Shown here: positions 1 through 24,000 of the stretch, in pieces
Numbering within the stretch: the stretch's first letter is position 1
How the letters are laid out: each line of letters opens with the position of its first letter
From: Gekko japonicus
Lineage: Eukaryota
Length of the DNA: 64,000 nt
Assembly (NCBI RefSeq): GCF_001447785.1
Contig: NW_015164680.1
Span: forward strand, 731,980-795,979
Reading direction: 5' to 3'
Notes under the pieces: model-generated
What the model was told of the DNA's origin: nothing
The model's input: only the letters and a program-made list of their open reading frames with translations
Databases searched by the model: none
Program-made: the position numbers and the translations under genes

Positions 1-6
1 GAGAGA

Positions 7-83
7 GGAAGGAAGGAAGGAAGGAAGGAAGGAAGGAAGGAAGGAAGGAAGGAAGGAAGGAAGGAAGGAAGGAAGGAAGGAAG
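7..83 (+). repeat. (GGAA)n microsatellite
   Basis: About 19 perfect GGAA units. Confidence 0.98.
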
Positions 84-409
84 AGGTATGGTGGTGGATG
101 ATTATGCACTGGGGTTGCCAACCTCCAGGTAGTGCCTGGAGATCCCCCGGGATTACAACTGATCTCCAGGTGACAGGGATCAGTGCTCCTGGAGAAAATG
201 GATGCTTTGGAAGATGGACTGTATGGCATTATACCCGAGTGAAGTCCCTCCCCTCCCCTCATCCTTCCCTCCTCAGGTCCCACCCCCAAAATCTCCACAT
301 ATTTTCCAGCCCAGAGCTGGCAAGCCCATTATGCACCAGCTCAAAAAAGGAGAATAAAATAGCAGAGGAAGTTAACGCCTCAACATGGAATATATGATGT
401 TCCTCTTAC

Positions 410-521
410 TTTTTTCTCCTCCACGGTGGACCCCTCCGATCCCTCCCGTCGCAAACACAGGGATACCAGCTTTGTGTGCCACAAGCATAGTTCCTGCCAC
501 AGTAGTACCACCGGACAAGCC
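410..521 (-). CDS. PsuG-like gene coding exon 4 ([37 protein letters not shown])
   Basis: Acceptor ttctacgacag| at 522-523, donor A|GTAAGA at 408-409; 112 nt, phase 0 to 1; TTVA..TM and [10 protein letters not shown] motifs. Confidence 0.95.
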
Positions 522-3500
522 CTGTCGTAGAACAGCCGGTCAAAGTCCAGTTAGAATATAACCCAATCAGCAGTGCACAGAGCAGCAATTCACAGGGAAA
601 GGGAACTGAGGCAAGACAGCAAGGGTTGTGGTAATCTGATCCTGAAAACCCCCAGGCTGCCCTGGGTCAGGGTCTCCATCTCTGAGCACAGTGGGTTCCC
701 AGTAAGTGGGGATTTTTAACCCAGGTCAACCTGGGGATTTTTCTACTGATAAGCATATTGTCAAACAGACAAGTCAATCAATAACTAGTAGATGTTTGGA
801 TGTTGTATGGATGGATCAATATGTTTCTATGGCAGATCTAAAAGAAAGAAATATTGACATTCAATGGTTTCAGTCTACCCAGTGGAGACATTATATGGTT
901 GCAAATAAAGCCAAACAAAAATTAAGTAATAATTCAACAGAGAAAATGGGAAGAAAATGCTTCAGTGTGATATCTCTGAACAAGAATTTATTTATTTATT
1001 TATTTATTTATTCCATTTATACCCCGCCCTCCCCACGAACAGGCTCAGGGTTGCTTACATTAATCGGTACCCAGTACCATAAAACCATATACAAAAGTTA
1101 AAACATATTAAACATTTAAAACAATCAGGTAATCAAAGTGCTAGTGATAGTAATGGAGACTTATATTCACAACAGGTCCTGCTAAAGTAATACGAATTAA
1201 CGTGGTAGAGAATTTTTAGCAAATAATATATTTGTGACACTATACTCCCCACAAACTACATAAGATATTTGAGGGGAAGCAGTATAAACGTTGGAAATGT
1301 GGCCTTATTTCTGCAGATTTCAGCCACACATGGTTGTTTTGCCCTGTGAACAAAATTTGTTAGTGATCACAAAAACAGAGCGCAAAACTTCTTACAAATT
1401 ACCCGTGACTCCAACAGCTATACTGCTTGGTATAATTGGTGATCATATACTTGTTGTGAATAGAAGTATAATACAAGATCTGTTAATGGTTGCAAAATTG
1501 TTAATTGCAAAAAATAATAATAATGGAGAAATGTTAAATCCATGAATATTAAAATGTATATCCAAAAAGTATGGTATCTGGTAAAATAATTTAGATTAAC
1601 AGAGGTTGTATGTTTGAGGGCCAGAAGACAGAAAGATCCTTTCTTTTTTGAATGTTGACAAGCTTGTTAAAGCTACTGGTAGCAGATACTTGGGCTGACT
1701 ACTGGACTGATTTCACACAAGAGCTGCGCTGCGGTCACGCCTCCCTTTGTCCCGCTTCTATTGGTCAATTTCCCACTCTAAGCCATGCAGCCGCATTTTG
1801 AACTGCGGTTTCGCCCGATTTTCCCCGCGGTTTCATGATCCTCAAAAAAAAAACTTATCTGATGTAATGTAATGTATATTTTGTCTGTGTTATAATGCAA
1901 ACCTTTAAAATAACAACAACAAAATTGCTCATGGATCTTAGAATGTGAGTCCTAAAATCCTTATTTCCTACTTTAGCATTAGGGTTGCCAGTTCTAGGTT
2001 GAGAAATACCAGGAGATTTGGGGGGGGGGGAGTGGAGCCTGGGGAGTTTAGGACTGGGAGAAGGGAGGGACTTCAGCAGCTATAATCAGGGCTTTTTTGG
2101 TAGAAAAAGCACAGCAGGAACTCATTAGCATAACAGGCCACACCCAACAGCAGGAACTCATTAGCATATTAGGCCACACCCCTGACAGCAGCTCATTAGC
2201 ATATTATGCCACACCCCACATTACCAGAAGTCTGGTCATCCAGCCACACTCACCTTTTGCTTCTTATTCTGTTTACCTTGTTTGTTGTCAAAACCCAGGG
2301 CTTTTTTTTGTAGCAGGAACCCTTTGCATGTTAGGCCACACACCCCTAATGTAGCCAGTCCTAATGAGTTTCTGCTGTTGGGTGTGGCCTATTATGCTAA
2401 TATGTTCCTGCTGGGCGTGGCCAACTCGGGAGCCAGCCGGAACTCCGTTCCTGTGCGTTCCTGCCCAAAAATAGCCCTGGCTATAATGCCATAATGTTCA
2501 CCTTCCAAAGCAGCCATTTTCTCCAGGGGAACTGATCTTGGTCATCTGGAGATCAAATGTAAAAGCAGGAGACCTCCAGGTACCACCTGGAGGCTGACAA
2601 CCCTATTTAGCACCCAGCTGCCTAGAACAAAAGTTAGAATTTCTACCATAGTTGTGCACTTAAGCCCATGGCGATGAATAGGGCCAGGGCATCTCCCACC
2701 TCTTAGGCCTACCATGACAACATCAGACCGTCTCCGCTACTTGCTGCCGGGCAATGTTTGTAACCTGTGAGCTGTAAACATACCAATTGCACTTACACAG
2801 GAAGCCCTAATAACAACATTTTTAACTAGTTAGCCAGCTGGAAGGTACAGTTTCCCTAGAAGATGCTGAAGAGGCTATGCTGGAAGCACAAGCAGCCTGT
2901 ATTGCTCTGAGCTTCTTTGGATGTTGGGGCCTGCAGTGATTTGCCGCTGGAACTAATATTGCTGCCTGTGCCTGCTGCTGCACTAGTATCATTCACCTTC
3001 GGTCTACAAACGTGTAAATGTATTTATCTGTACAAAAAAAAGAGACTTCTATACTCTTTCCTTCAAAAGAGATGAAGTATGCAGGAATTTCAAAGAACGT
3101 TCGGTTATCTGAAGATATATTTAGGCCTCCCTTTGCTAGGCTTGCCATCTGCCCACACACAACAGGTAAACCCTTCTACCCTCAGCCTAAATCCCCTGTC
3201 CTTGAGAAATTGAGGAGGAGGAGAAAAAAATGGCCAGAGATTAGGCTCTCTAGTGACATTCCAGGCTAGGAATTTCCTCCACAGTATTTATGAAAGAGAT
3301 TAAGGGAAATTCCTAGAATGTCACCCAGAAGAGACATCATATCCTCTCCAAACTCAATCCACCCCAGGCACTGCCCTCAAAATCTCCCGGTGTTCATTGA
3401 GACAATGCTGGCAACCCTATGACCTTTTCAGGGGTGAGGCGCATCAGCCACAAGTTTTGGTAGGACCAAAAGAGATCAATGAGAGGTATCAGTACCTGGC

Positions 3501-6500
3501 TGAGAACATAGGGAAAGTCTCTGCGGGATACCTTCACTGCATTTTTTGTTTTTGCCAGACGCTCGAGTTCATCATTCTGGAGGCCTACATGGATACAGCC
3601 ATTCAAAATGCCTACAGTGGCTGGCACAGCACCATTTGTTCTTACGATTTCCTCTACCTCTCTGGCTGTGCTGGATCAATTCCGCAGAACACAATAAAAA
3701 ACAAGAGAAGAGAAAATATTTAAGCCTACCAAAATGAAACAGGAATCCTGCAGAACCTTAAAGATCCACAAAATTAATTACAGTGTAAACATGGCTAGCC
3801 ATCTAGAATTAAGATTCAGGTGGGCAGCCATGTTGGACTGAAGAATATAACAAAGTTTGACTCCAGCAGCATCTTTCAGACCAACACATTTCTGGGTAGA
3901 AGCTTTCATGGGCATGCACACTTCTTCCGTTGTGAAAGTGGTTATGTCTAGTTTGGTGTAGTGGTTAAGAGCGTGGACTCTAATTTGGGAGAACCAGGAT
4001 TGATTCCCCACTCCTCCACAAGCAGTGCTGGTATGACCTTGGGTCAGTCATAAATTCTGTCAGAGTTGTTCTCTCAAGGGCAGTTCTCGAGAGAGCCCTC
4101 TCAGCCTTACAGGGTGTCTGTTGTGGGGAGGGAAAGGGATTGTAAGCAGCTCTGAGACTCCTTCAGGTAGTGAAAGGCGGGGTATAGATCCAACCTCTTC
4201 TTCTATCCTTCTTATATCAACCTTCATCTGAAGAAGTGTGCATGCACATGAAAGCTCAGGGGTCGTTTCGTAGAAAAAGAGCTAGGGGAACTCATTAGCA
4301 TAACTCATTAGCATATGCCACATCCCCTGACATCACCGAAAGTGTGTCATAAGGCCACACCCCCTGACATCACCGGAGGTGTGTCATAAGGCCACACACC
4401 CCGCCCCCAACGGTCCCGGCCGCCGCCGGCAGCCTTGCAGCTCCACTGCCGAGCCCCATGAGGTGCCCGGCGAAGGCCCTCCCTGGCCCCAGGCAGGCAG
4501 GGGTGGGGAGAGGCAGGGAGGAAGCAACTTACCCTCCCTCTTCTCCTGCCTCCTCCTGGCTGAATGAGGGCCGGAAGCGGGGCGGCCGGAAGCAGGGGGC
4601 GGGGCTTCATCATGTGCCCCGCCCCCCATACCTCACCCGGGGGAACTGCGTTCCCCCGCGTTCCCCCCCGAAATGACCCCTGTGAAAGCTTATACCCATA
4701 AACTCTGTTGGTCTTAAAGGTACCACTGGACTCAAACTTGCATCTAGAATTAAGCTGATTCTATACTGAGATCTGTCCTCCATTGGCCTCCTTAACCCAG
4801 TGCTTTCATTTAATTTCTTTCAGCTATTATGAAGTTTTTGTCCAGAACCTTTTATCACCTACAATCTGATCTTTTTAAAAAAATACTGACCGTGGGGACC
4901 TTCTGTATGCAAAGCAGATGCTCTGCCAGTGAGCCACAACCCCTACTTATGGCTCTCCCTTTAAAAGTAAGGTTACACACCTGTGCCCATCAGTTGGTGG
5001 ACTACAACATCAGGTAATGGCTTAAATGCACAGAGCAGCTATCACAGGACAAATGTCGGCGACTATGATAATGCTTTATCTGACATCAGTTCAGAAACAA
5101 CATTTATCAGCCAAGGCAGCTCATAAATTCAGCTGCAAGTCACCAAGTGATAAGTCCGTCCTCAAGTAATGAAATGTCAGGTGTGCCAAAGGTATGCATG
5201 TATCAAAATTCAGTCTTTTGCGACAACGGAAAATGCATAGACTTCACAACCTCAGATTCTGGGGATATGGCATGCCGTGGGTAATTATCGTGCTTTCCAA
5301 GGCAACAACAGGCCTCCCATTGTCCAGAGCTTCCTTTACGAAAGGGTGAACTTTGAAGCCAACACCTAGAATAAAGAACAAAATACAGCTAGTACTTATA
5401 ACGAGAGACACTGACAAGGCAGTTCCTAGGCAGTGCTAAGTCCTTTCCAGTGCATTGAGGTAGACACAGGGGTCATTTCGGGGGGGAACGTGGGGGAACG
5501 CAGTTCCCCCGGGTGAGGTGCAGGGGGAAGCCCCGCCCCCTGCTTCCGGCCGCCCCGCTTCCAGCCCTCATTCAGCCAGGAGGAGGCAGGAGAAGAGGTA
5601 GGGTAAGTTGCTTCCTCCCCGCCTCTCCCCACCCCTGCCTGCCTGGGGCCAGGGAGGGCCTTGGCGGGGCTTCCTCGCACTCCCGCTGGCCTTGCAGGTC
5701 CACCGCCGGGCCCCTGATGTCAGGGGGTGTGGCTTATGCTAATGAGTTATGCTAATGAGTTCCCCTAGCTCTTTTTCTACGAAATGACCCCTGGGTAGAC
5801 ATAATCACTTCCACAACTTAAATGGAGGCCATCACCACCCAAAGTTCTGGGGTTTATATTTGGTAATTCTACCAAGGTTCACAGCAATTGATGTAATTGT
5901 TTTGACCAGAAATTGCCATTACTTTGGAATAGTGTGCTAATGGGCAGCCAGTGTGGTGTCAGAGTAGAATCTGAGAGACCCAATGGAAGTCAATCTTTCA
6001 ACTACTTAATCCTATACTTTTAGCATCATGGCATGGGGCAGGATAGGGGAACCGGGATGTCTGATACCAGGACATTTGCTTAACTCCCTACAAGATTGCT
6101 GCCTAAATAAATAAAATAAAAACAAGCATTTATATAACATTTTCTGTATTGAATGTTTCCCATGTATTTCCTTGTTGTAATAAGCCCTGTAAAACAGGCC
6201 AGTATTACAGATGGGAGGCAGAGGGCTATTTACAGTACAATCCTAGGCATGTCTACCCAGAAATAAATCCCTCTGGGGTCAAGGGTCAGTTGGAGGCCTC
6301 ACCACTTGTTTGCCGAGGGAGCAGTCCTAGGCAGGTTATTCAGTGGCACTTACTCCCAGGAAAGTGCCCTTACGGACTACAGCCTCTCAGTCACCATACT
6401 AGAGCTTCTAGGTTCAGCACTGAGAGATCAAGGGACATGCAGGGCTATTTTGGGGCAGGAACGCACAGGAACGGAGTTCCGGCTGGCTCCTGAGTTGGCC

Positions 6501-7018
6501 ACGCCCAGCAGGAACTCATTAACATAATAGGCCACACCCAATAGCAGAAACTCATTAGGATTGGCCACATTAGGGGTGTGTGGCCTAACATGCAAAGGAG
6601 TTCCTGCTACAAAAAAAGCCCTNNNNNNNNNNNNNNNNNNNNNNNNNNNNNNNNNNNNNNNNNNNNNNNNNNNNNNNNNNNNNNNNNNNNNNNNNNNNNN
6701 NNNNNNNNNNNNNNNNNNNNNNNNNNNNNNNNNNNNNNNNNNNNNNNNTGGCCTAATATGCTAATGAGTTCTGCTGTTGGGTGTGGCCTATTATGCTAAT
6801 GAGTTCCTGCTGGGCTTTTTCTACAAAAAGAGCCCTGGTTTCCCGGACATGCATGCATGGGTGAGTCAGCCACAGTGTCAATGGAGGGCAGGGGACCAAC
6901 AAAATGAGAGAAGAGACCTCTTGAGGAAACACTCACTGTGCAAACCTCTTCTTACTTGGAGGACACACTGAGCCATCCGAGTTGTGTGGGAACCCAAGAT
7001 ACAAACCGGCATTCCCAT
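410..7018 (-). CDS. Pseudouridine-5'-phosphate glycosidase (PsuG/YeiN/IndA family), N-terminal part of the probable bifunctional pseudouridine-metabolizing protein; spliced and 3'-incomplete (join 7018-6937, 5365-5251, 3670-3496, 521-410)
   Basis: Manual splicing gives [161 protein letters not shown]. It has the family motifs [36 protein letters not shown] and [12 protein letters not shown]. All introns are GT-AG with matching phases (1,2,0,1) and there are no stops. Confidence 0.93.
2087..2479 (+). mobile_element. hAT-type MITE (CAGGGCT TIR family)
   Basis: TIRs cagggcttttt / aaaaatagccctg; perfect 8-bp TSD gctataat; inserted in an AGGGTTGCC-family element (about 1980-2605). Confidence 0.85.
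3496..3670 (-). CDS. PsuG-like gene coding exon 3 ([20 protein letters not shown]...[13 protein letters not shown])
   Basis: Acceptor ttgatccag|, donor CAG|GTACTG; 175 nt, phase 2 to 0; partly visible in ORF 3394..3627(-). Confidence 0.95.
3946..4205 (+). mobile_element. tRNA-derived squamate SINE
   Basis: A-box tggtgtagtgg, B-box-like gattgattccc, (TTC)-type tail; related copies at 8073, 18652 and 34294. Confidence 0.75.
4257..4682 (+). mobile_element. hAT-type MITE (CAGGGGTC TIR family), copy 1
   Basis: TIRs caggggtcgtttcg / cgaaatgacccctg; perfect 8-bp TSD tgaaagct. Confidence 0.9.
5251..5365 (-). CDS. PsuG-like gene coding exon 2 ([37 protein letters not shown])
   Basis: Acceptor ttctttattctag|, donor AG|GTTGTG; 115 nt, phase 1 to 2. 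The ALEST glutamate corresponds to catalytic Glu31 of E. coli PsuG. Confidence 0.95.
5467..5793 (-). mobile_element. hAT-type MITE (CAGGGGTC TIR family), copy 2, inverted
   Basis: Same TIRs and body in reverse orientation; perfect 8-bp TSD ggtagaca. Confidence 0.9.
6440..6837 (-). mobile_element. hAT-type MITE, inverted copy of 2087-2479 (spans an assembly gap)
   Basis: Reverse-complement similarity to 2087-2479 with the same TIRs; TSD not clean. Confidence 0.75.
6937..7018 (-). CDS. PsuG-like gene probable first coding exon ([27 protein letters not shown]), presequence-like; the exon probably extends to an acceptor at 7069
   Basis: ATG in strong Kozak context (ggaaccATGG); consensus donor CA|GTGAGT in phase 1 matching the next exon; strong polypyrimidine acceptor cttttctgccctgcttctttcag| at 7070-7071, followed by an in-frame TGA upstream of the ATG. 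Confidence 0.7.
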
Positions 7019-11075: not shown

Positions 11076-14000
11076 CACCTCCCCCCTTGGTCCAGATTAC
11101 CCCTAGCTGACATAGTCTTTTAAGTGTGCTGGTCTCTTCTGTTCCCTTGTGGAGTGGCGGACCTCAGGGGCCGGCGCTGAGATCTCGGGTACCGTACTTG
11201 TCGGTTCTGGGGAAGGAACGTCGGCTGCGGGGGCCACTGCGGGGGCCGGTGTGCTGCTAGGTTCCTGGCTGGCCGCTGGTTCCGAGCCATTGCTGTTCTC
11301 CCTCGGTTGTGTTTGAGCAGCCGCCTCTGGTGCCCCGGGCGACAGATCGTCTTCTGGGCTGTCTTCCGGCATGTCCGGGTCTGTTGGCAGGAGAAGGTAG
11401 CATAGTTGATCAATGTGCCACCTCCACAGCTGGCTGTCGTCACATGAGACCTTGTATGAAAGCGGTCCGGTCACCCGGACAACCCGTGCTGGAACCCAGG
11501 TGGGACCCCTGCCGTAGTTTCTGGCATACACGGGGTCTTCTGGAAAGAACTCTCGTGGAGCCTCTTGGTCCTCGGGGCTTGTGCTGTGTTTTGGTGCCCG
11601 GTCCGGGTGCAGACGATCTAGCTGAGTCGTCAGGCAATGTCCCATCAACAGCTCTGCTGGGCTGCAGCCGGTGGTGGTATGGGGGGGGGTCGAGCGCTGG
11701 CTGAATAGGAAGGCAGCCAGCTTGTAGTGCCAATCCCCCTGGTCCATACAGCGCAGTGCCTCCTTCGTGGTCCAGACCATGCGCTCCTGCCTCATTCGTG
11801 GTCCAGACCATGCGCTCCGCCTGGCCGTTGGTCGCGGGATGAAACAGAGCGGAGCGGATGTGCCGTATAACATAATATTGCACGAACTCCTGAAACTCTG
11901 TGGAGGTAAAGGCTGTGCCATTGTCGGTGACCAATGAGTCCAGTATTCCATGGGTGCTAAAGATCTGCCACATCGCGTGGATGGCCAACCAGGACAAGGT
12001 AGATGGGACTGGTGTGACCTCCAACCACTTCGTGTAGGCATCAACAAGTATGAAGAAGATCTGTCCCTGGAAGGGCCCAGCAAAGTCCAGATGTAGTCTC
12101 GCCCAAGGCTTGTGGGACGACTCCCATGGCCGCACTGGTGCTTTCGGTGGCTCGGGTCTGGACTCCTGGCATTTCTAGCACCGCTTTACTGTATCCTCCA
12201 CCTCACTGTCCAACCCTGGCCATTATACATAGCTCCGGGCAAAGGCTTTCATTTGTACTATCCCCGGGTGGTGTTCATGTAGGGTGATGCGTACTCATCC
12301 TTGCAGGGGTGGCGGTATCACCACCCGGCTTCCCCACAACAGACCCCCTTTTTGTGCAGACAACTCATCGTGGCGTGATGAGAATGCTGAGAACTCGGGT
12401 CCCACTGGGCCGGCACGCCACCCTCTCCCCACCCAGTCCAAGACCCGGGAGAGGATGTGATCCCAGGTTGAGTGGCATGACACCTCCCCCACCTGAACCA
12501 GGTGATCGGGGAGGTACGCCAGCAGGTCTATGTGGTGCGCTGGGGTGGGGTCAGGGTCGAAGGAAGACAGCGGGAGGTGGCTCAGGGTGTCTGCATGGCC
12601 CATCGCCTTACCCGGGCGGTGGAGCAAGGAGTACTGATAGCCAACGAGGAAAATGGACCAACGGAGCACCCTGGGAGACAAAATCTGGGGGGTCTGGTGG
12701 TCCGGGGTGAGTAGACCCAAGAGGGGCTTGTGGTCAGTAATGATCCTGAAAGTCCGGCCATAAGGGAAATCGTGAATTTTTTTCACACCGGCAACGATCG
12801 CAAGGGCCTCCTTATCAATTTACGCGTAGTTGCACTCCACAGCCAACAGTCTGTGTGAATAATAGGCCACAGGAACCTCACGGCCGTCAGCCAGCCGGTG
12901 ACCCAGGACCACCCCCACCTCATAAGGAGAAGCGTCACAAGCTAACACCACGGGCAGGGACTCATTGAAGTAGGCGAGGACCTCATTCGAGACCAACAGG
13001 TCTTTTACTGCCTGGAAGGCGTCGTCATGTTTAGGACCTCAGACCCAAGAAGCATGCTTATCTAAGAGTTTGTACAGAGGTTCAGGAATGGCGGCCTTGT
13101 GGGGGAGGAAGAAATGATAAAAAATTTAAAGTCCCAGGAAAGCCTGTAACTCTGCCTTAGTTGAGGGCGTGGGTGCTTGACTGATGGCATGTATCTTGTC
13201 CTGCATGGGGTGAATTCCATGGGCATCCACTGCAAACCCCACAGAATGCATTTCTCCCACTTCACCTTCAGGCCAGTGTTGGCGAATTGCTCGAGCACTG
13301 TCTGTAGCTGTGCCGCAAAGGTCTCGGAGTCTGGAGCCACAATTAAAACATCGTCAAAGAACAGCTGGAGTCCCAGGATGCGTTTGAGGAGGCAATCCAT
13401 CAGATTCTGAAAAATCCCCGGTGCAACGCTCACCCCAAATTGCAGGTGCCGCACTCTGAAAGCCCCCCTGTGGGTTACTATGGTTTGAGCATTGGCTGAG
13501 GTGTTGTCCACCGGCAGCTGCTGATAGGCCCAGGTCAAGTCCAGCTTGCCGAAAGCCCTTGCTCCCACCATGGAAGCCAATATCTGACTGACCACCGGTA
13601 CCAGGTATGCGTGATCTTGAAGTGCCTTGTTAACGGTGCACTTATAGTCGGCACAAATACGGATGTCCCCATTAGGTTTTATCGGGGTGACGATGGGGGT
13701 TTCCCAGCGGGCATGCAGCACTGGTTCTAGTACCCCCTGCTCTACCAGGCAGTCCAGTTCGGCTTCTATCTTGGGTTGCAGCGCTAATGGGGGCTGCCTG
13801 GCCTTCATTTGGATGGGCCGTACTTCTGGGTCAAGTTCAAGGGAAACTGGGGTGCCGGAGTAGCGGCCAAGCATGCCGTCGAATACTCCCAAGAATTTCC
13901 CGCAGACCGAATTAAAGTCCTGAAGTTGTACCGAGTTTACGCCCGTCACTGCAAATCCCAGGGGCCCAAACCACGCACGTCCCAGCAGGCTCATGAGTTT

Positions 14001-15018
14001 CCCTTCCACCAACAGCAATTCTAAAGGGCCATCAAAGTCTCTGAATTGTACCCTGAATTTGCCCTAGCCCTTGATGGCCACGGGTTTTTTTTGGACAGAC
14101 CCCGTGGCTTTTCCAGGAGGCCCCCCCCCAGGGCAGAGTTTCTGTAATGTCTCTGCTGAGATTATGGAAAATGAGAAGCCCGTGTCCAGTTCCACACAAC
14201 AGGTGGACCCCTCTATTAACATCGTAATGCGCATTTTGTTAGGGGCTTCAGGGGGCAAATTCAGTACCTGGTGCTGCTGGTGGTTGACGGTGTGCAGAGG
14301 TCCTCCAGATGGGTGGACATCTTCTTCCAGGCACTGCGGGAGCAGCAGGCGTGGGTGATGTGGCCTTACTTCCTGCATGTTCGGCAGACGGCATTGTGAA
14401 AACAGCACGTCCGCCGTTCATGTGCATCTCCACAGCTGGCACACAGCGCTTGGGCAGCAGACTTGTCGTGGTGTCCGGTTGCTCCCAATGGTGTAAGCGG
14501 CTTCCTGCGGCTGGGCTGGCGAACGAGCGAGACTACTTCTTCGTCCAAGTTGTTGAACGCCGTGGCTGGGAACACGTGGTGTGTTAAAGATGGTGGACAG
14601 TCACGGTGTGAGCCCTCGAATGTGGTGGCCATCTGGAGGGCTACATCTAACTTGAGGTCTGCGGTACCTACAAGTTTGCAGCAGAGTTTGGTGTCTCGAA
14701 GCCCCCAAAAGAATTGGGTTAGGATGTTTTCCTCCACCTTCATGAACTCACAGTCCACCGCCTGCTGACAGAGTTCGGCCATGAATACGGAGGCAGTTTC
14801 GCTGGGCCCCTGGAGGCGTGCCTGGAAGTCCATGCGCTTGGCCATCATGGTGGGCTTCAGCGCATAGTACTTCATGAGGGCCTCGGCGATCTCATCGTAC
14901 GTGTTCTCTGTTAGTTTATTCGGCTTATATCCCCGTAGCAAACCACACCCAAACACACACCCACACCCGTGATAGGTTATTTACAGTGTACCCAAGTCCC
15001 ATAGGTCAATTCTCGGAT

Positions 15019-22899: not shown

Positions 22900-24000
22900 T
22901 CGGGTACTGTGATTTGCCAAACATCCTGGCCGAGTGATTACACCCATGTTTCCTGCGAAAACAGGCACCGTTGTAACGTGGGTACAAATACTCCCCGCAC
23001 ATTCCAGCACGTACAGATTAACACTTCGAGACCGTGACGGAAATTCCCGAACTCCGTAAATTCCCGAGAGACTCCGTCTCCATACTGCCCCTCCCCCAGG
23101 CATTCCCCCACCAATCTCCCTTCTCCCCCAGAAACGGTATCGCTCCATTCGCCCCGCCTTTCTCCCTCTCCATAGGCGAGCTCGGTTACAGGGATCACCA
23201 ATCAGAATTCTTGTTGCCAAGTCAATCCTTCCCTTCGGCTCCCCCGTTCCACACCAGCTCCCGGCAGAGAAGCCACGCCCATTGGTTTTTGCCCCGCCCT
23301 ACTGTCCAGCCGGCCGGAAGGATGCGCTCCCGGAAGTTCCGGTGGGGCCATCGCTGTGTGGGGTAAACAGTAATGGCGGAGGCTGCGGTGGCCCCCGGTG
23401 GTGGCGGAGCAGCGGCAGCGGCAGCCGCGGCAGCTGGAGGGGCGGCTGTCACGGCTTCCAGCCCTTCCACTGCTGGCGCCACCACCACCACCACCACGGC
23501 CTCCAGCCCCCCCGCAGCCGGACCCCAGCCCCCGCCAGTCGGAGCCGGAGGAGGAAGCAGCGGCTGTTGGACGAAGCAAGTCGCCTGCAGGTAACGTGCT
23601 GAGGCGGCGGCGGGTGATGGCGCCCGTGTCTCCCCTGTAGCTCCCCCCCCCCCATTCCCGCTNNNNNNNNNNNNNNNNNNNNNNNNNNNNNNNNNNNNNN
23701 NNNNNNNNNNNNNNNNNNNNNNNNNNNNNNNNNNNNNNNNNNNNATATATCCAGGCATTGTTTGGCTGCGTCTCTTTTCTCTTAAGCGCGTTCTTCTGTC
23801 GGATATCCTCCCTGGCTGTGCAGGTCGTGCTGCCTGTTTGTTCTTGATTCGGACTAAACTCAGTTGACGAAAGCCCGGGTCTCCCCCGAGTCCACAGTCC
23901 GCCCCCCGAAAAAACAAAACAGCGGCGGAGGCTGTAGCAGGGGTCTGAGTGAGTAGCAGCCTGCGGTATCCGGTCGCCGCTGACTGCTTCTTCTTTATTT
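22900..24000 (+). promoter_or_regulatory. MKRN1 CpG-island promoter
   Basis: CpG/GC-rich region spanning exon 1; CCAAT boxes (23111; ATTGG at 23281), GC box GCCCCGCCC 23291-23299, ETS motifs CCGGAAG at about 23314 and 23330; no TATA box. Confidence 0.8.
23373..23590 (+). CDS. MKRN1: MKRN1 exon 1 (Ala/Gly/Thr-rich N-terminus to WTKQVACR)
   Basis: MAEAA...GCWTKQVAC; donor CAG|GTAACG. Confidence 0.95.

What the first reader, a model, noticed from the sequence alone, without database searches (positions are those of the whole stretch)
410..7018. Hidden, intact vertebrate pseudouridine-catabolism gene (PsuG-type C-glycosidase) of a pathway lost in mammals
Seen: four short minus-strand exons buried among transposons splice in phase into an uninterrupted 161-codon frame with the N-terminal PsuG motifs (ALEST with the Glu31 equivalent, [22 protein letters not shown]). 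Known: E. coli YeiN/PsuG cleaves pseudouridine-5'-phosphate to uracil and ribose-5-phosphate. Many eukaryotes have it fused to a PfkB-type pseudouridine kinase, while mammals lack it and excrete pseudouridine. Inference: this reptile retains functional pseudouridine salvage. As far as I know the vertebrate enzyme is not characterised biochemically. The Schiff-base lysine region and the kinase domain should lie to the left of the window.
Basis: partly seen in the sequence, partly recalled or inferred. Interest (0 to 1): 0.85.

Follow-up and report, generated by a model that had tools for sequence, protein, structure and literature searches.

The report
First exons of pseudouridine-breakdown gene

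Summary
Minus-strand exons 7018-6937, 5365-5251, 3670-3496 and 521-410 all have AG/GT borders. They add up to 484 nt, which is 161 codons plus 1 nt.

- **Family match:** exons 2, 3 and 4 each pass the Pfam Indigoidine_A/PsuG threshold alone. They cover profile positions 2-30, 32-90 and 92-126 in order.
- **Exon 1:** it has no family hit but aligns to the N-terminal leader of turtle, alligator and bird orthologues (shared RRxLH motif).
- **Assembly gap (6623-6748):** no residue is missing across intron 1. The gap sits inside one interspersed repeat in that intron and touches no coding frame.
- **Transcript evidence:** a contig from another run of the same species joins exon 3 to exon 4 exactly and runs on 59 nt. 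A second contig covers exon 2 exactly.

The orthologues are about 700 aa long, with PsuG followed by a PfkB kinase. They are annotated as 'zgc:136858' or 'pseudouridine-metabolizing bifunctional protein C1861.05-like' in sharks, fish, frogs, turtles, alligator and many birds. The fusion in animals and the loss in mammals (platypus excepted) are published.

Only the first 161 of about 700 codons lie in the window. The rest, enzyme activity and dN/dS were not testable. Verdict: a real, correctly identified gene that is already known. Interest is low.

The parts
6937..7018 (-). Coding exon 1 (82 nt): start codon at 7018, followed by a 27-residue basic leader ending RRGLH. Donor is GTGAGT.
   Evidence: Translation and splice site. 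It aligns to the N-termini of alligator, turtle and bird orthologues (41% identity, shared QV-RRxLH) with no gap into exon 2. tblastn gives only a weak hit, E 0.53. There is no Pfam hit. I did not lay RNA reads on it.
5366..6936 (-). Intron 1. It contains the assembly gap 6623-6748 inside an interspersed repeat (6440-6840) and a GC-rich repeat at 5465-5793.
   Evidence: Both gap flanks match one inverted repeat copy at 2084-2479. No orthologue residue is missing between exons 1 and 2.
5251..5365 (-). Coding exon 2 (115 nt): start of the PsuG domain, with ALEST carrying the equivalent of E. coli Glu31.
   Evidence: PF04227 profile positions 2-30, E 4.2e-12. Matches PDB 8k05 and 4gij. An X1 contig covers exactly 5251-5365 and runs on 44 nt beyond the acceptor.
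3496..3670 (-). Coding exon 3 (175 nt): KVSRRD with the equivalent of E. coli Lys93 (phosphate binding).
   Evidence: PF04227 profile positions 32-90, E 9.3e-20. Matches 4gij chain residues 70-127. 74-79% identical to sauropsid orthologues. An X1 contig joins it directly to exon 4.
410..521 (-). Coding exon 4 (112 nt): TTVAGTM and [12 protein letters not shown], with the equivalent of E. coli Thr130. Donor is GTAAGA. The gene continues to the left of the window.
   Evidence: PF04227 profile positions 92-126, E 1.9e-14. Matches 4gij chain residues 129-164. 81-89% identical to sauropsid orthologues. The X1 contig continues 59 nt beyond it into sequence absent from 1-407.

Best explanation
The window holds the first four coding exons (161 of about 700 codons) of this sauropsid's orthologue of the metazoan bifunctional pseudouridine-catabolism gene. 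That gene is annotated elsewhere as zgc:136858, as 'pseudouridine-metabolizing bifunctional protein C1861.05-like', or as 'PsuKG'. By homology, the C-terminal PfkB-type kinase (outside the window) phosphorylates free pseudouridine released by RNA turnover. [quoted passage not shown] It goes through ribose ring opening, with Glu31 as proton donor, and a covalent adduct on Lys166. Shown here: the exon structure, the family membership of exons 2-4, collinear orthology, retention of the Glu31, Lys93 and Thr130 equivalents, and a spliced transcript. Inferred: the fused kinase in this species, an intact remainder of the gene, the enzyme activity, and any organellar targeting by the basic 27-residue leader.
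For: Each of exons 2-4 passes the PF04227 threshold alone, at collinear profile positions. The best solved relatives are E. coli PsuG (4gij) and Arabidopsis PUMY (8k05). Mapping onto the 4gij chain, which is offset by 23 residues, places Glu31 at exon 2 residue 23, Lys93 at exon 3 residue 46 and Thr130 at exon 4 residue 25. The roles of these residues come from PMC10761123. The exon 3 search and its follow-up found about 700-aa PF04227+PF00294 proteins in sharks, ray-finned fish, lungfish, frogs, turtles, alligator and many birds. Exons 1-4 align without gaps to residues 1 to about 161 of these proteins. The window matches 54 of 57 columns that are invariant across ten vertebrates. The three misses are conservative, and two of them equal the E. 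coli residue. The kinase half of the alligator orthologue matches the NCBIfam 'pseudouridine kinase' model best, E 1e-24, below its cut-off. Contigs from a run of the same species join 3496 to 521 exactly with no mismatches, and respect both borders of exon 2. Raw RNA reads give low depth on the exon bins and none in the adjacent non-repeat intron bins at 547-910 and 2731-2912. PMC9247573 states that metazoan PsuG and PsuK sit on one chain.
Against: Only 23% of the coding sequence lies in the window, so stops or frameshifts downstream cannot be excluded. The metal-binding Asp145, Ser147 and the covalent Lys166 equivalents are outside the window. The junctions 6937/5365 and 5251/3670 were not seen directly. 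The run holding the spliced contigs is only guessed to be RNA. Expression in the three raw RNA runs is very low, at most about 1x depth with 3-12% of each run read. No squamate orthologue with a name appeared in the lists I saw. No vertebrate member of the family has been assayed.
Confidence: 0.9

Rival explanations
1. It is a unitary pseudogene in early decay. The N-terminal exons still look intact and are still transcribed, but the gene is broken further downstream, outside the window.
For: Only 161 of about 700 codons can be read here. Expression in the raw RNA runs is very low. The gene has been lost once before in amniotes, in therian mammals (PMC9247573).
Against: The window matches 54 of 57 vertebrate-invariant columns, has no stop and keeps all eight splice signals. 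The spliced contig continues 59 nt into the next exon. Turtles, crocodilians and birds all keep full-length copies.
Confidence: 0.05
2. In this lineage it is a stand-alone glycosidase. The kinase domain would have been split off or lost, so the product would be a PsuG of about 330 aa rather than the fusion.
For: The kinase part is not in the window. Short glycosidase-only isoforms are annotated in some animals, for example crab proteins of 357-414 aa.
Against: Every full-length vertebrate orthologue listed carries PF04227 and PF00294 on one chain. The literature describes the fusion as general in metazoa.
Confidence: 0.04
3. It is a chance set of open frames among transposons, not a gene.
For: The introns are full of repeats, and exon 1 has no family hit by itself.
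Against: There are three independent Pfam hits at collinear profile positions, canonical splice sites in phase, 74-89% identity to orthologues and a spliced contig.
Confidence: 0.01

Closest known systems
Vertebrate 'zgc:136858' / 'pseudouridine-metabolizing bifunctional protein C1861.05-like' (called PsuKG in PMC9247573). Examples: alligator P0263, Gopherus turtle P0227, ostrich P0267.
   Same: Same gene by collinear alignment. It shares the basic N-terminal leader with RRxLH, followed by the PsuG domain. Identity to turtle is 41%, 73%, 79% and 89% over exons 1-4.
   Different: Only residues 1-161 can be compared. There are three conservative departures from vertebrate-invariant residues: Leu to Phe in RRDFP, Ser to Ala in TTVA, and Val to Ala in FATGG. 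The kinase half was not seen in this genome.
E. coli PsuG/YeiN (PDB 4gij) and Arabidopsis PUMY (PDB 8k05)
   Same: Same fold family (PF04227) and the same catalytic equivalents within the window (Glu31, Lys93, Thr130). The mechanism is taken from these enzymes.
   Different: The bacterial and plant enzymes are stand-alone proteins of about 310-340 aa. The plant enzyme is peroxisomal (title of Chen and Witte 2020, as cited). The vertebrate protein is fused to a kinase and has a basic N-terminal leader. I found no PTS1 or PTS2 pattern in the orthologues.
S. pombe YOW5 (SPCC1861.05), pseudouridine-metabolizing bifunctional protein
   Same: It is the namesake of the automatic annotation and has the same N-terminal glycosidase and C-terminal kinase order.
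   Different: It is a fungal protein and I did not compare it directly here.

Membership tests
PsuG / Indigoidine_A (PF04227) | Significant match to the family profile | tested here: met
   Exons 2, 3 and 4 score 46.4, 71.5 and 54.1 bits separately (cut-off 25.2), at profile positions 2-30, 32-90 and 92-126 of 291.
PsuG / Indigoidine_A (PF04227) | Proton-donor Glu (E. coli Glu31, Arabidopsis Glu50) | tested here: met
   The Glu of ALEST, exon 2 residue 23, aligns to 4gij chain residue 54, which is Glu31. Its role is from PMC10761123.
PsuG / Indigoidine_A (PF04227) | Phosphate-binding Lys (E. coli Lys93, Arabidopsis Lys112) and Thr130 | tested here: met
   The Lys of KVSRRD aligns to chain residue 116. 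The Thr of FATGG aligns to chain residue 153.
PsuG / Indigoidine_A (PF04227) | Metal-binding Asp145, Ser147 and the covalent-adduct Lys166 | not testable with these tools
   These lie in profile positions above 126, encoded left of the window. tblastn finds none of that part in the window.
PsuG / Indigoidine_A (PF04227) | Cleavage of pseudouridine 5'-phosphate to uracil and ribose 5-phosphate | not testable with these tools
   This needs an enzyme assay. No vertebrate member has been assayed, according to PMC9247573.
Metazoan bifunctional PsuG-PsuK (zgc:136858 type) | Collinear orthology with vertebrate members, including the N-terminal leader | tested here: met
   Gap-free alignment of exons 1-4 to residues 1 to about 161 of ten orthologues. 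The window matches 54 of 57 invariant columns.
Metazoan bifunctional PsuG-PsuK (zgc:136858 type) | PfkB-type pseudouridine kinase domain on the same polypeptide | not testable with these tools
   That part lies outside the window. All listed vertebrate orthologues have PF00294 after PF04227, and the alligator kinase half is closest to the NCBIfam pseudouridine kinase model. The transcript continues past exon 4.

The most novel reading that the evidence does not exclude
The conserved leader encoded by exon 1 is basic, almost free of acidic residues, 27-30 residues long and ends in RRxLH. It could be a mitochondrial presequence. Vertebrate pseudouridine breakdown would then take place in mitochondria rather than in peroxisomes as in plants. 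The head-to-head position next to MKRN1 would mark the exact spot where therian mammals lost the pathway.
Probability: 0.25. Interest if true: 0.35.

Novelty: already known. Interest (0 to 1): 0.15.

Why it matters
It matters little beyond correct annotation. The gene family, its fused architecture in animals and its absence from mammals other than platypus are all published. Orthologues are annotated automatically in hundreds of vertebrate genomes. One gap remains open: no vertebrate PsuG-PsuK enzyme has been assayed. This locus, like any bird, turtle or fish orthologue, could supply a clone for that assay and for asking where in the cell the enzyme acts.

Tried and rejected
- **Joined model:** I did not search the four exons as one joined protein. 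Each exon was searched separately by reference.
- **The look-up of encoding contigs:** I could fetch no DNA of relatives, so no dN/dS could be computed, and the unnamed fragments closest to exon 3 (P0002 at 84%, P0007 at 74%) could not be placed.
- **NCBIfam:** no hit for the three exons. No NCBIfam model matched these exons, so this says nothing against membership.
- **Paper search:** a search for 'zgc 136858' found nothing. Preumont 2008, Huang 2012 and Chen and Witte 2020 are not held. Their content is cited only through papers that quote them.
- **Read laying:** I used the single call on 1-5450 and kept it off the assembly gap on purpose. Exon 1 and the 6937/5365 junction were therefore not tested with reads. 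The 5251/3670 junction did not appear among the rows shown.
- **Targeting signals:** pattern searches for peroxisomal PTS2 (strict) and PTS1 on the orthologues were negative.
- **Named squamate orthologue:** none was among the 120 rows shown. I ran no further search on this.
Full report
**Observation**

On the minus strand there are four open segments with canonical borders.

| Exon | Coordinates | Length | Acceptor | Donor |
|---|---|---|---|---|
| 1 | 7018-6937 | 82 nt | none (ATG at 7018) | GTGAGT |
| 2 | 5365-5251 | 115 nt | AG after a pyrimidine tract | GTTGTG |
| 3 | 3670-3496 | 175 nt | AG | GTACTG |
| 4 | 521-410 | 112 nt | AG | GTAAGA |

The lengths give 484 nt, which is 161 codons plus one base, with no stop in the in-frame parts.

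Every search was run exon by exon, by reference.

**More than chance**

Each of exons 2, 3 and 4 passes the gathering score of Pfam PF04227 (Indigoidine_A, the PsuG family) alone.

| Exon | E-value | Profile positions matched (of 291) |
|---|---|---|
| 2 | 4e-12 | 2-30 |
| 3 | 9e-20 | 32-90 |
| 4 | 2e-14 | 92-126 |

The single profile positions skipped at the two junctions are the split codon at the exon 2/3 junction and the exon 3/4 border. The best solved relatives are E. coli PsuG (4gij) and Arabidopsis PUMY (8k05).

**The assembly gap**

The N run at 6623-6748 lies inside intron 1 (6936-5366), so no reading frame crosses it.

Two results argue that nothing coding is hidden there and that the two sides belong together:

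- The flanks 6440-6598 and 6749-6840 both match, in order and in one orientation, a single inverted copy of an interspersed repeat at 2084-2479. The gap therefore sits inside one repeat copy.
- The alignment of exon 1 and exon 2 to ten vertebrate orthologues is continuous, with no missing residue at the junction.

I did not try to read or fill the gap, and I kept the one read-laying run off it. Its true length remains unknown.

**What the gene is**

A search of 1.84 billion representative proteins with exon 3 gave fragments at 74-84% identity. It also gave long proteins of 520-774 aa at 55-74% identity. Named members include the following:

- shark: 'uncharacterized protein zgc:136858'
- Polypterus: 'YOW5 protein'
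- frog: a 'PfkB domain-containing protein'

Searching with the 723-aa shark protein returned 2160 relatives at E <= 1e-30. All 120 rows listed carry both PF04227 and PF00294. They come from sharks, rays, gar, bowfin, teleosts, lungfish, Xenopus, Spea, turtles (Gopherus, Lepidochelys), alligator and many birds. Many are named 'pseudouridine-metabolizing bifunctional protein C1861.05-like'.

Exons 1-4 align collinearly to the first 161 or so residues of these proteins.

| Exon | Identity to turtle (P0227) | Identity to shark (P0019) |
|---|---|---|
| 1 | 41% | 30% |
| 2 | 73% | 59% |
| 3 | 79% | 62% |
| 4 | 89% | 73% |

This pattern fits a non-avian, non-turtle, non-crocodilian sauropsid.

Exon 1 has no family hit, but it shares the N-terminal leader and the RRxLH motif with the orthologues.

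tblastn with five full-length orthologues finds only their residues up to about 213 in the 64-kb window.

**Functional residues and constraint**

Using the 23-residue offset of the 4gij chain, three catalytic equivalents map into the window:

| E. coli residue | Position in the window | Motif |
|---|---|---|
| Glu31 (proton donor) | exon 2, residue 23 | ALEST |
| Lys93 (phosphate binding) | exon 3, residue 46 | KVSRRD |
| Thr130 | exon 4, residue 25 | FATGG |

The roles are those given for the E. coli and Arabidopsis enzymes in PMC10761123. The metal-binding Asp145, Ser147 and the covalent Lys166 are encoded outside the window.

Of 57 alignment columns that are invariant in ten orthologues from shark to bird, the window keeps 54. 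The three departures are conservative:

- Leu to Phe in RRDFP, a change shared with the closest unnamed fragment (P0002) and a crab protein
- Ser to Ala in TTVA, which equals the E. coli residue
- Val to Ala in FATGG, which equals the E. coli residue

This is protein-level evidence of constraint.

**Transcripts**

Twelve small runs of the same species hold exon 3, and three large raw RNA-seq runs of the species exist. I laid four runs on 1-5450.

- One contig of run X1 (345 nt, no mismatches) covers 3667-3495 and continues directly at 520-408. This is the 3496/521 junction, with one ambiguous G.
- The same contig then runs on 59 nt that lie nowhere in 1-407. Exon 4 is therefore spliced to a further exon beyond the window.
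- A second contig covers exactly 5251-5365 and runs on 44 nt past the acceptor.
- Raw RNA reads give low depth on the exon bins (about 1x at exon 4 in X13, with 3% of the run read). They give none on the adjacent non-repeat intron bins at 547-910 and 2731-2912.

The junctions 6937/5365 and 5251/3670 were not seen directly. X1 is only guessed to be RNA. However, a 182-million-letter (about 182 Mb) run that yields exon-exact, intron-free contigs is hard to explain as genomic DNA.

**Mechanism (by homology)**

The fused kinase makes pseudouridine 5'-phosphate from free pseudouridine. The PsuG domain then opens the ribose ring, forms a covalent lysine adduct and releases uracil and ribose 5-phosphate. 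The kinase half of the alligator orthologue is closest to the NCBIfam pseudouridine kinase model, although below its cut-off.

**Comparison with the literature**

- PMC9247573 states that in metazoa, amoebozoa and fungi PsuG and PsuK sit on one chain.
- The same paper states that mammals lack them except platypus, and that the zebrafish, fly, worm and yeast fusion proteins ('PsuKG') have not been defined biochemically.
- PMC12212127 and PMC10761123 repeat the absence from mammals.

The claim that the vertebrate enzyme is uncharacterised still seems to hold, since the searches found no assay. The gene itself is not new.

**Leader peptide**

The 27-30 residue N-terminal extension of all ten orthologues and of the window has 3-6 Lys/Arg and 0-2 acidic residues. 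None has a strict PTS2 pattern or an obvious C-terminal PTS1. This is compatible with a mitochondrial presequence, as the scan's note s1-816679 suggests, but it was not tested.

**Verdict**

The gene is already known and interest is low. The points left open are the intactness of the rest of the gene, exon 1 usage in RNA, selection among squamates, enzyme activity and localisation.

Noticed in passing
window 4257-4684 and 5465-5793: Two copies of a GC-rich repeat of about 430 nt lie in opposite orientation in intron 2 and intron 1 (93-96% complementary). They bracket the 115-nt exon 2. Such inverted pairs can favour back-splicing or skipping of the exon between them. No reads bearing on this were seen.
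   Followed up: no
window 2084-2479 and 6440-6840: An interspersed repeat of about 400 nt, with an inverted second copy that contains the assembly gap. It has very high depth in RNA runs (about 1000x in X13) and many 'goes back' joints around 2157-2190, which suggests internal tandem units of variable number.
   Followed up: partly
window 11100-14956, minus strand: A degenerate LTR-type retroelement upstream of the gene. Separate ORFs hit reverse transcriptase (PF00078), RT RNase H (PF17917, E 3e-05, just under its cut-off) and integrase core (PF00665). The pol region is split over several frames. I describe it only.
   Followed up: partly
window 23373-23594, plus strand; N run 23663-23744: An Ala/Gly-rich ORF ending in ...WTKQVACR. 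From memory it resembles the first exon of MKRN1, as the scan's note s1-816735 says. It would lie head-to-head with the pseudouridine gene, about 16 kb away. It has no Pfam hit by itself, and a second assembly gap follows it.
   Followed up: partly
window 6937-7018 and orthologues in alignment A1: The N-terminal leader is basic and nearly free of acidic residues, and it ends in a conserved RRxLH just before the PsuG domain in all vertebrate orthologues examined. No PTS1 or strict PTS2 pattern was found. It may be an organellar targeting peptide.
   Followed up: partly
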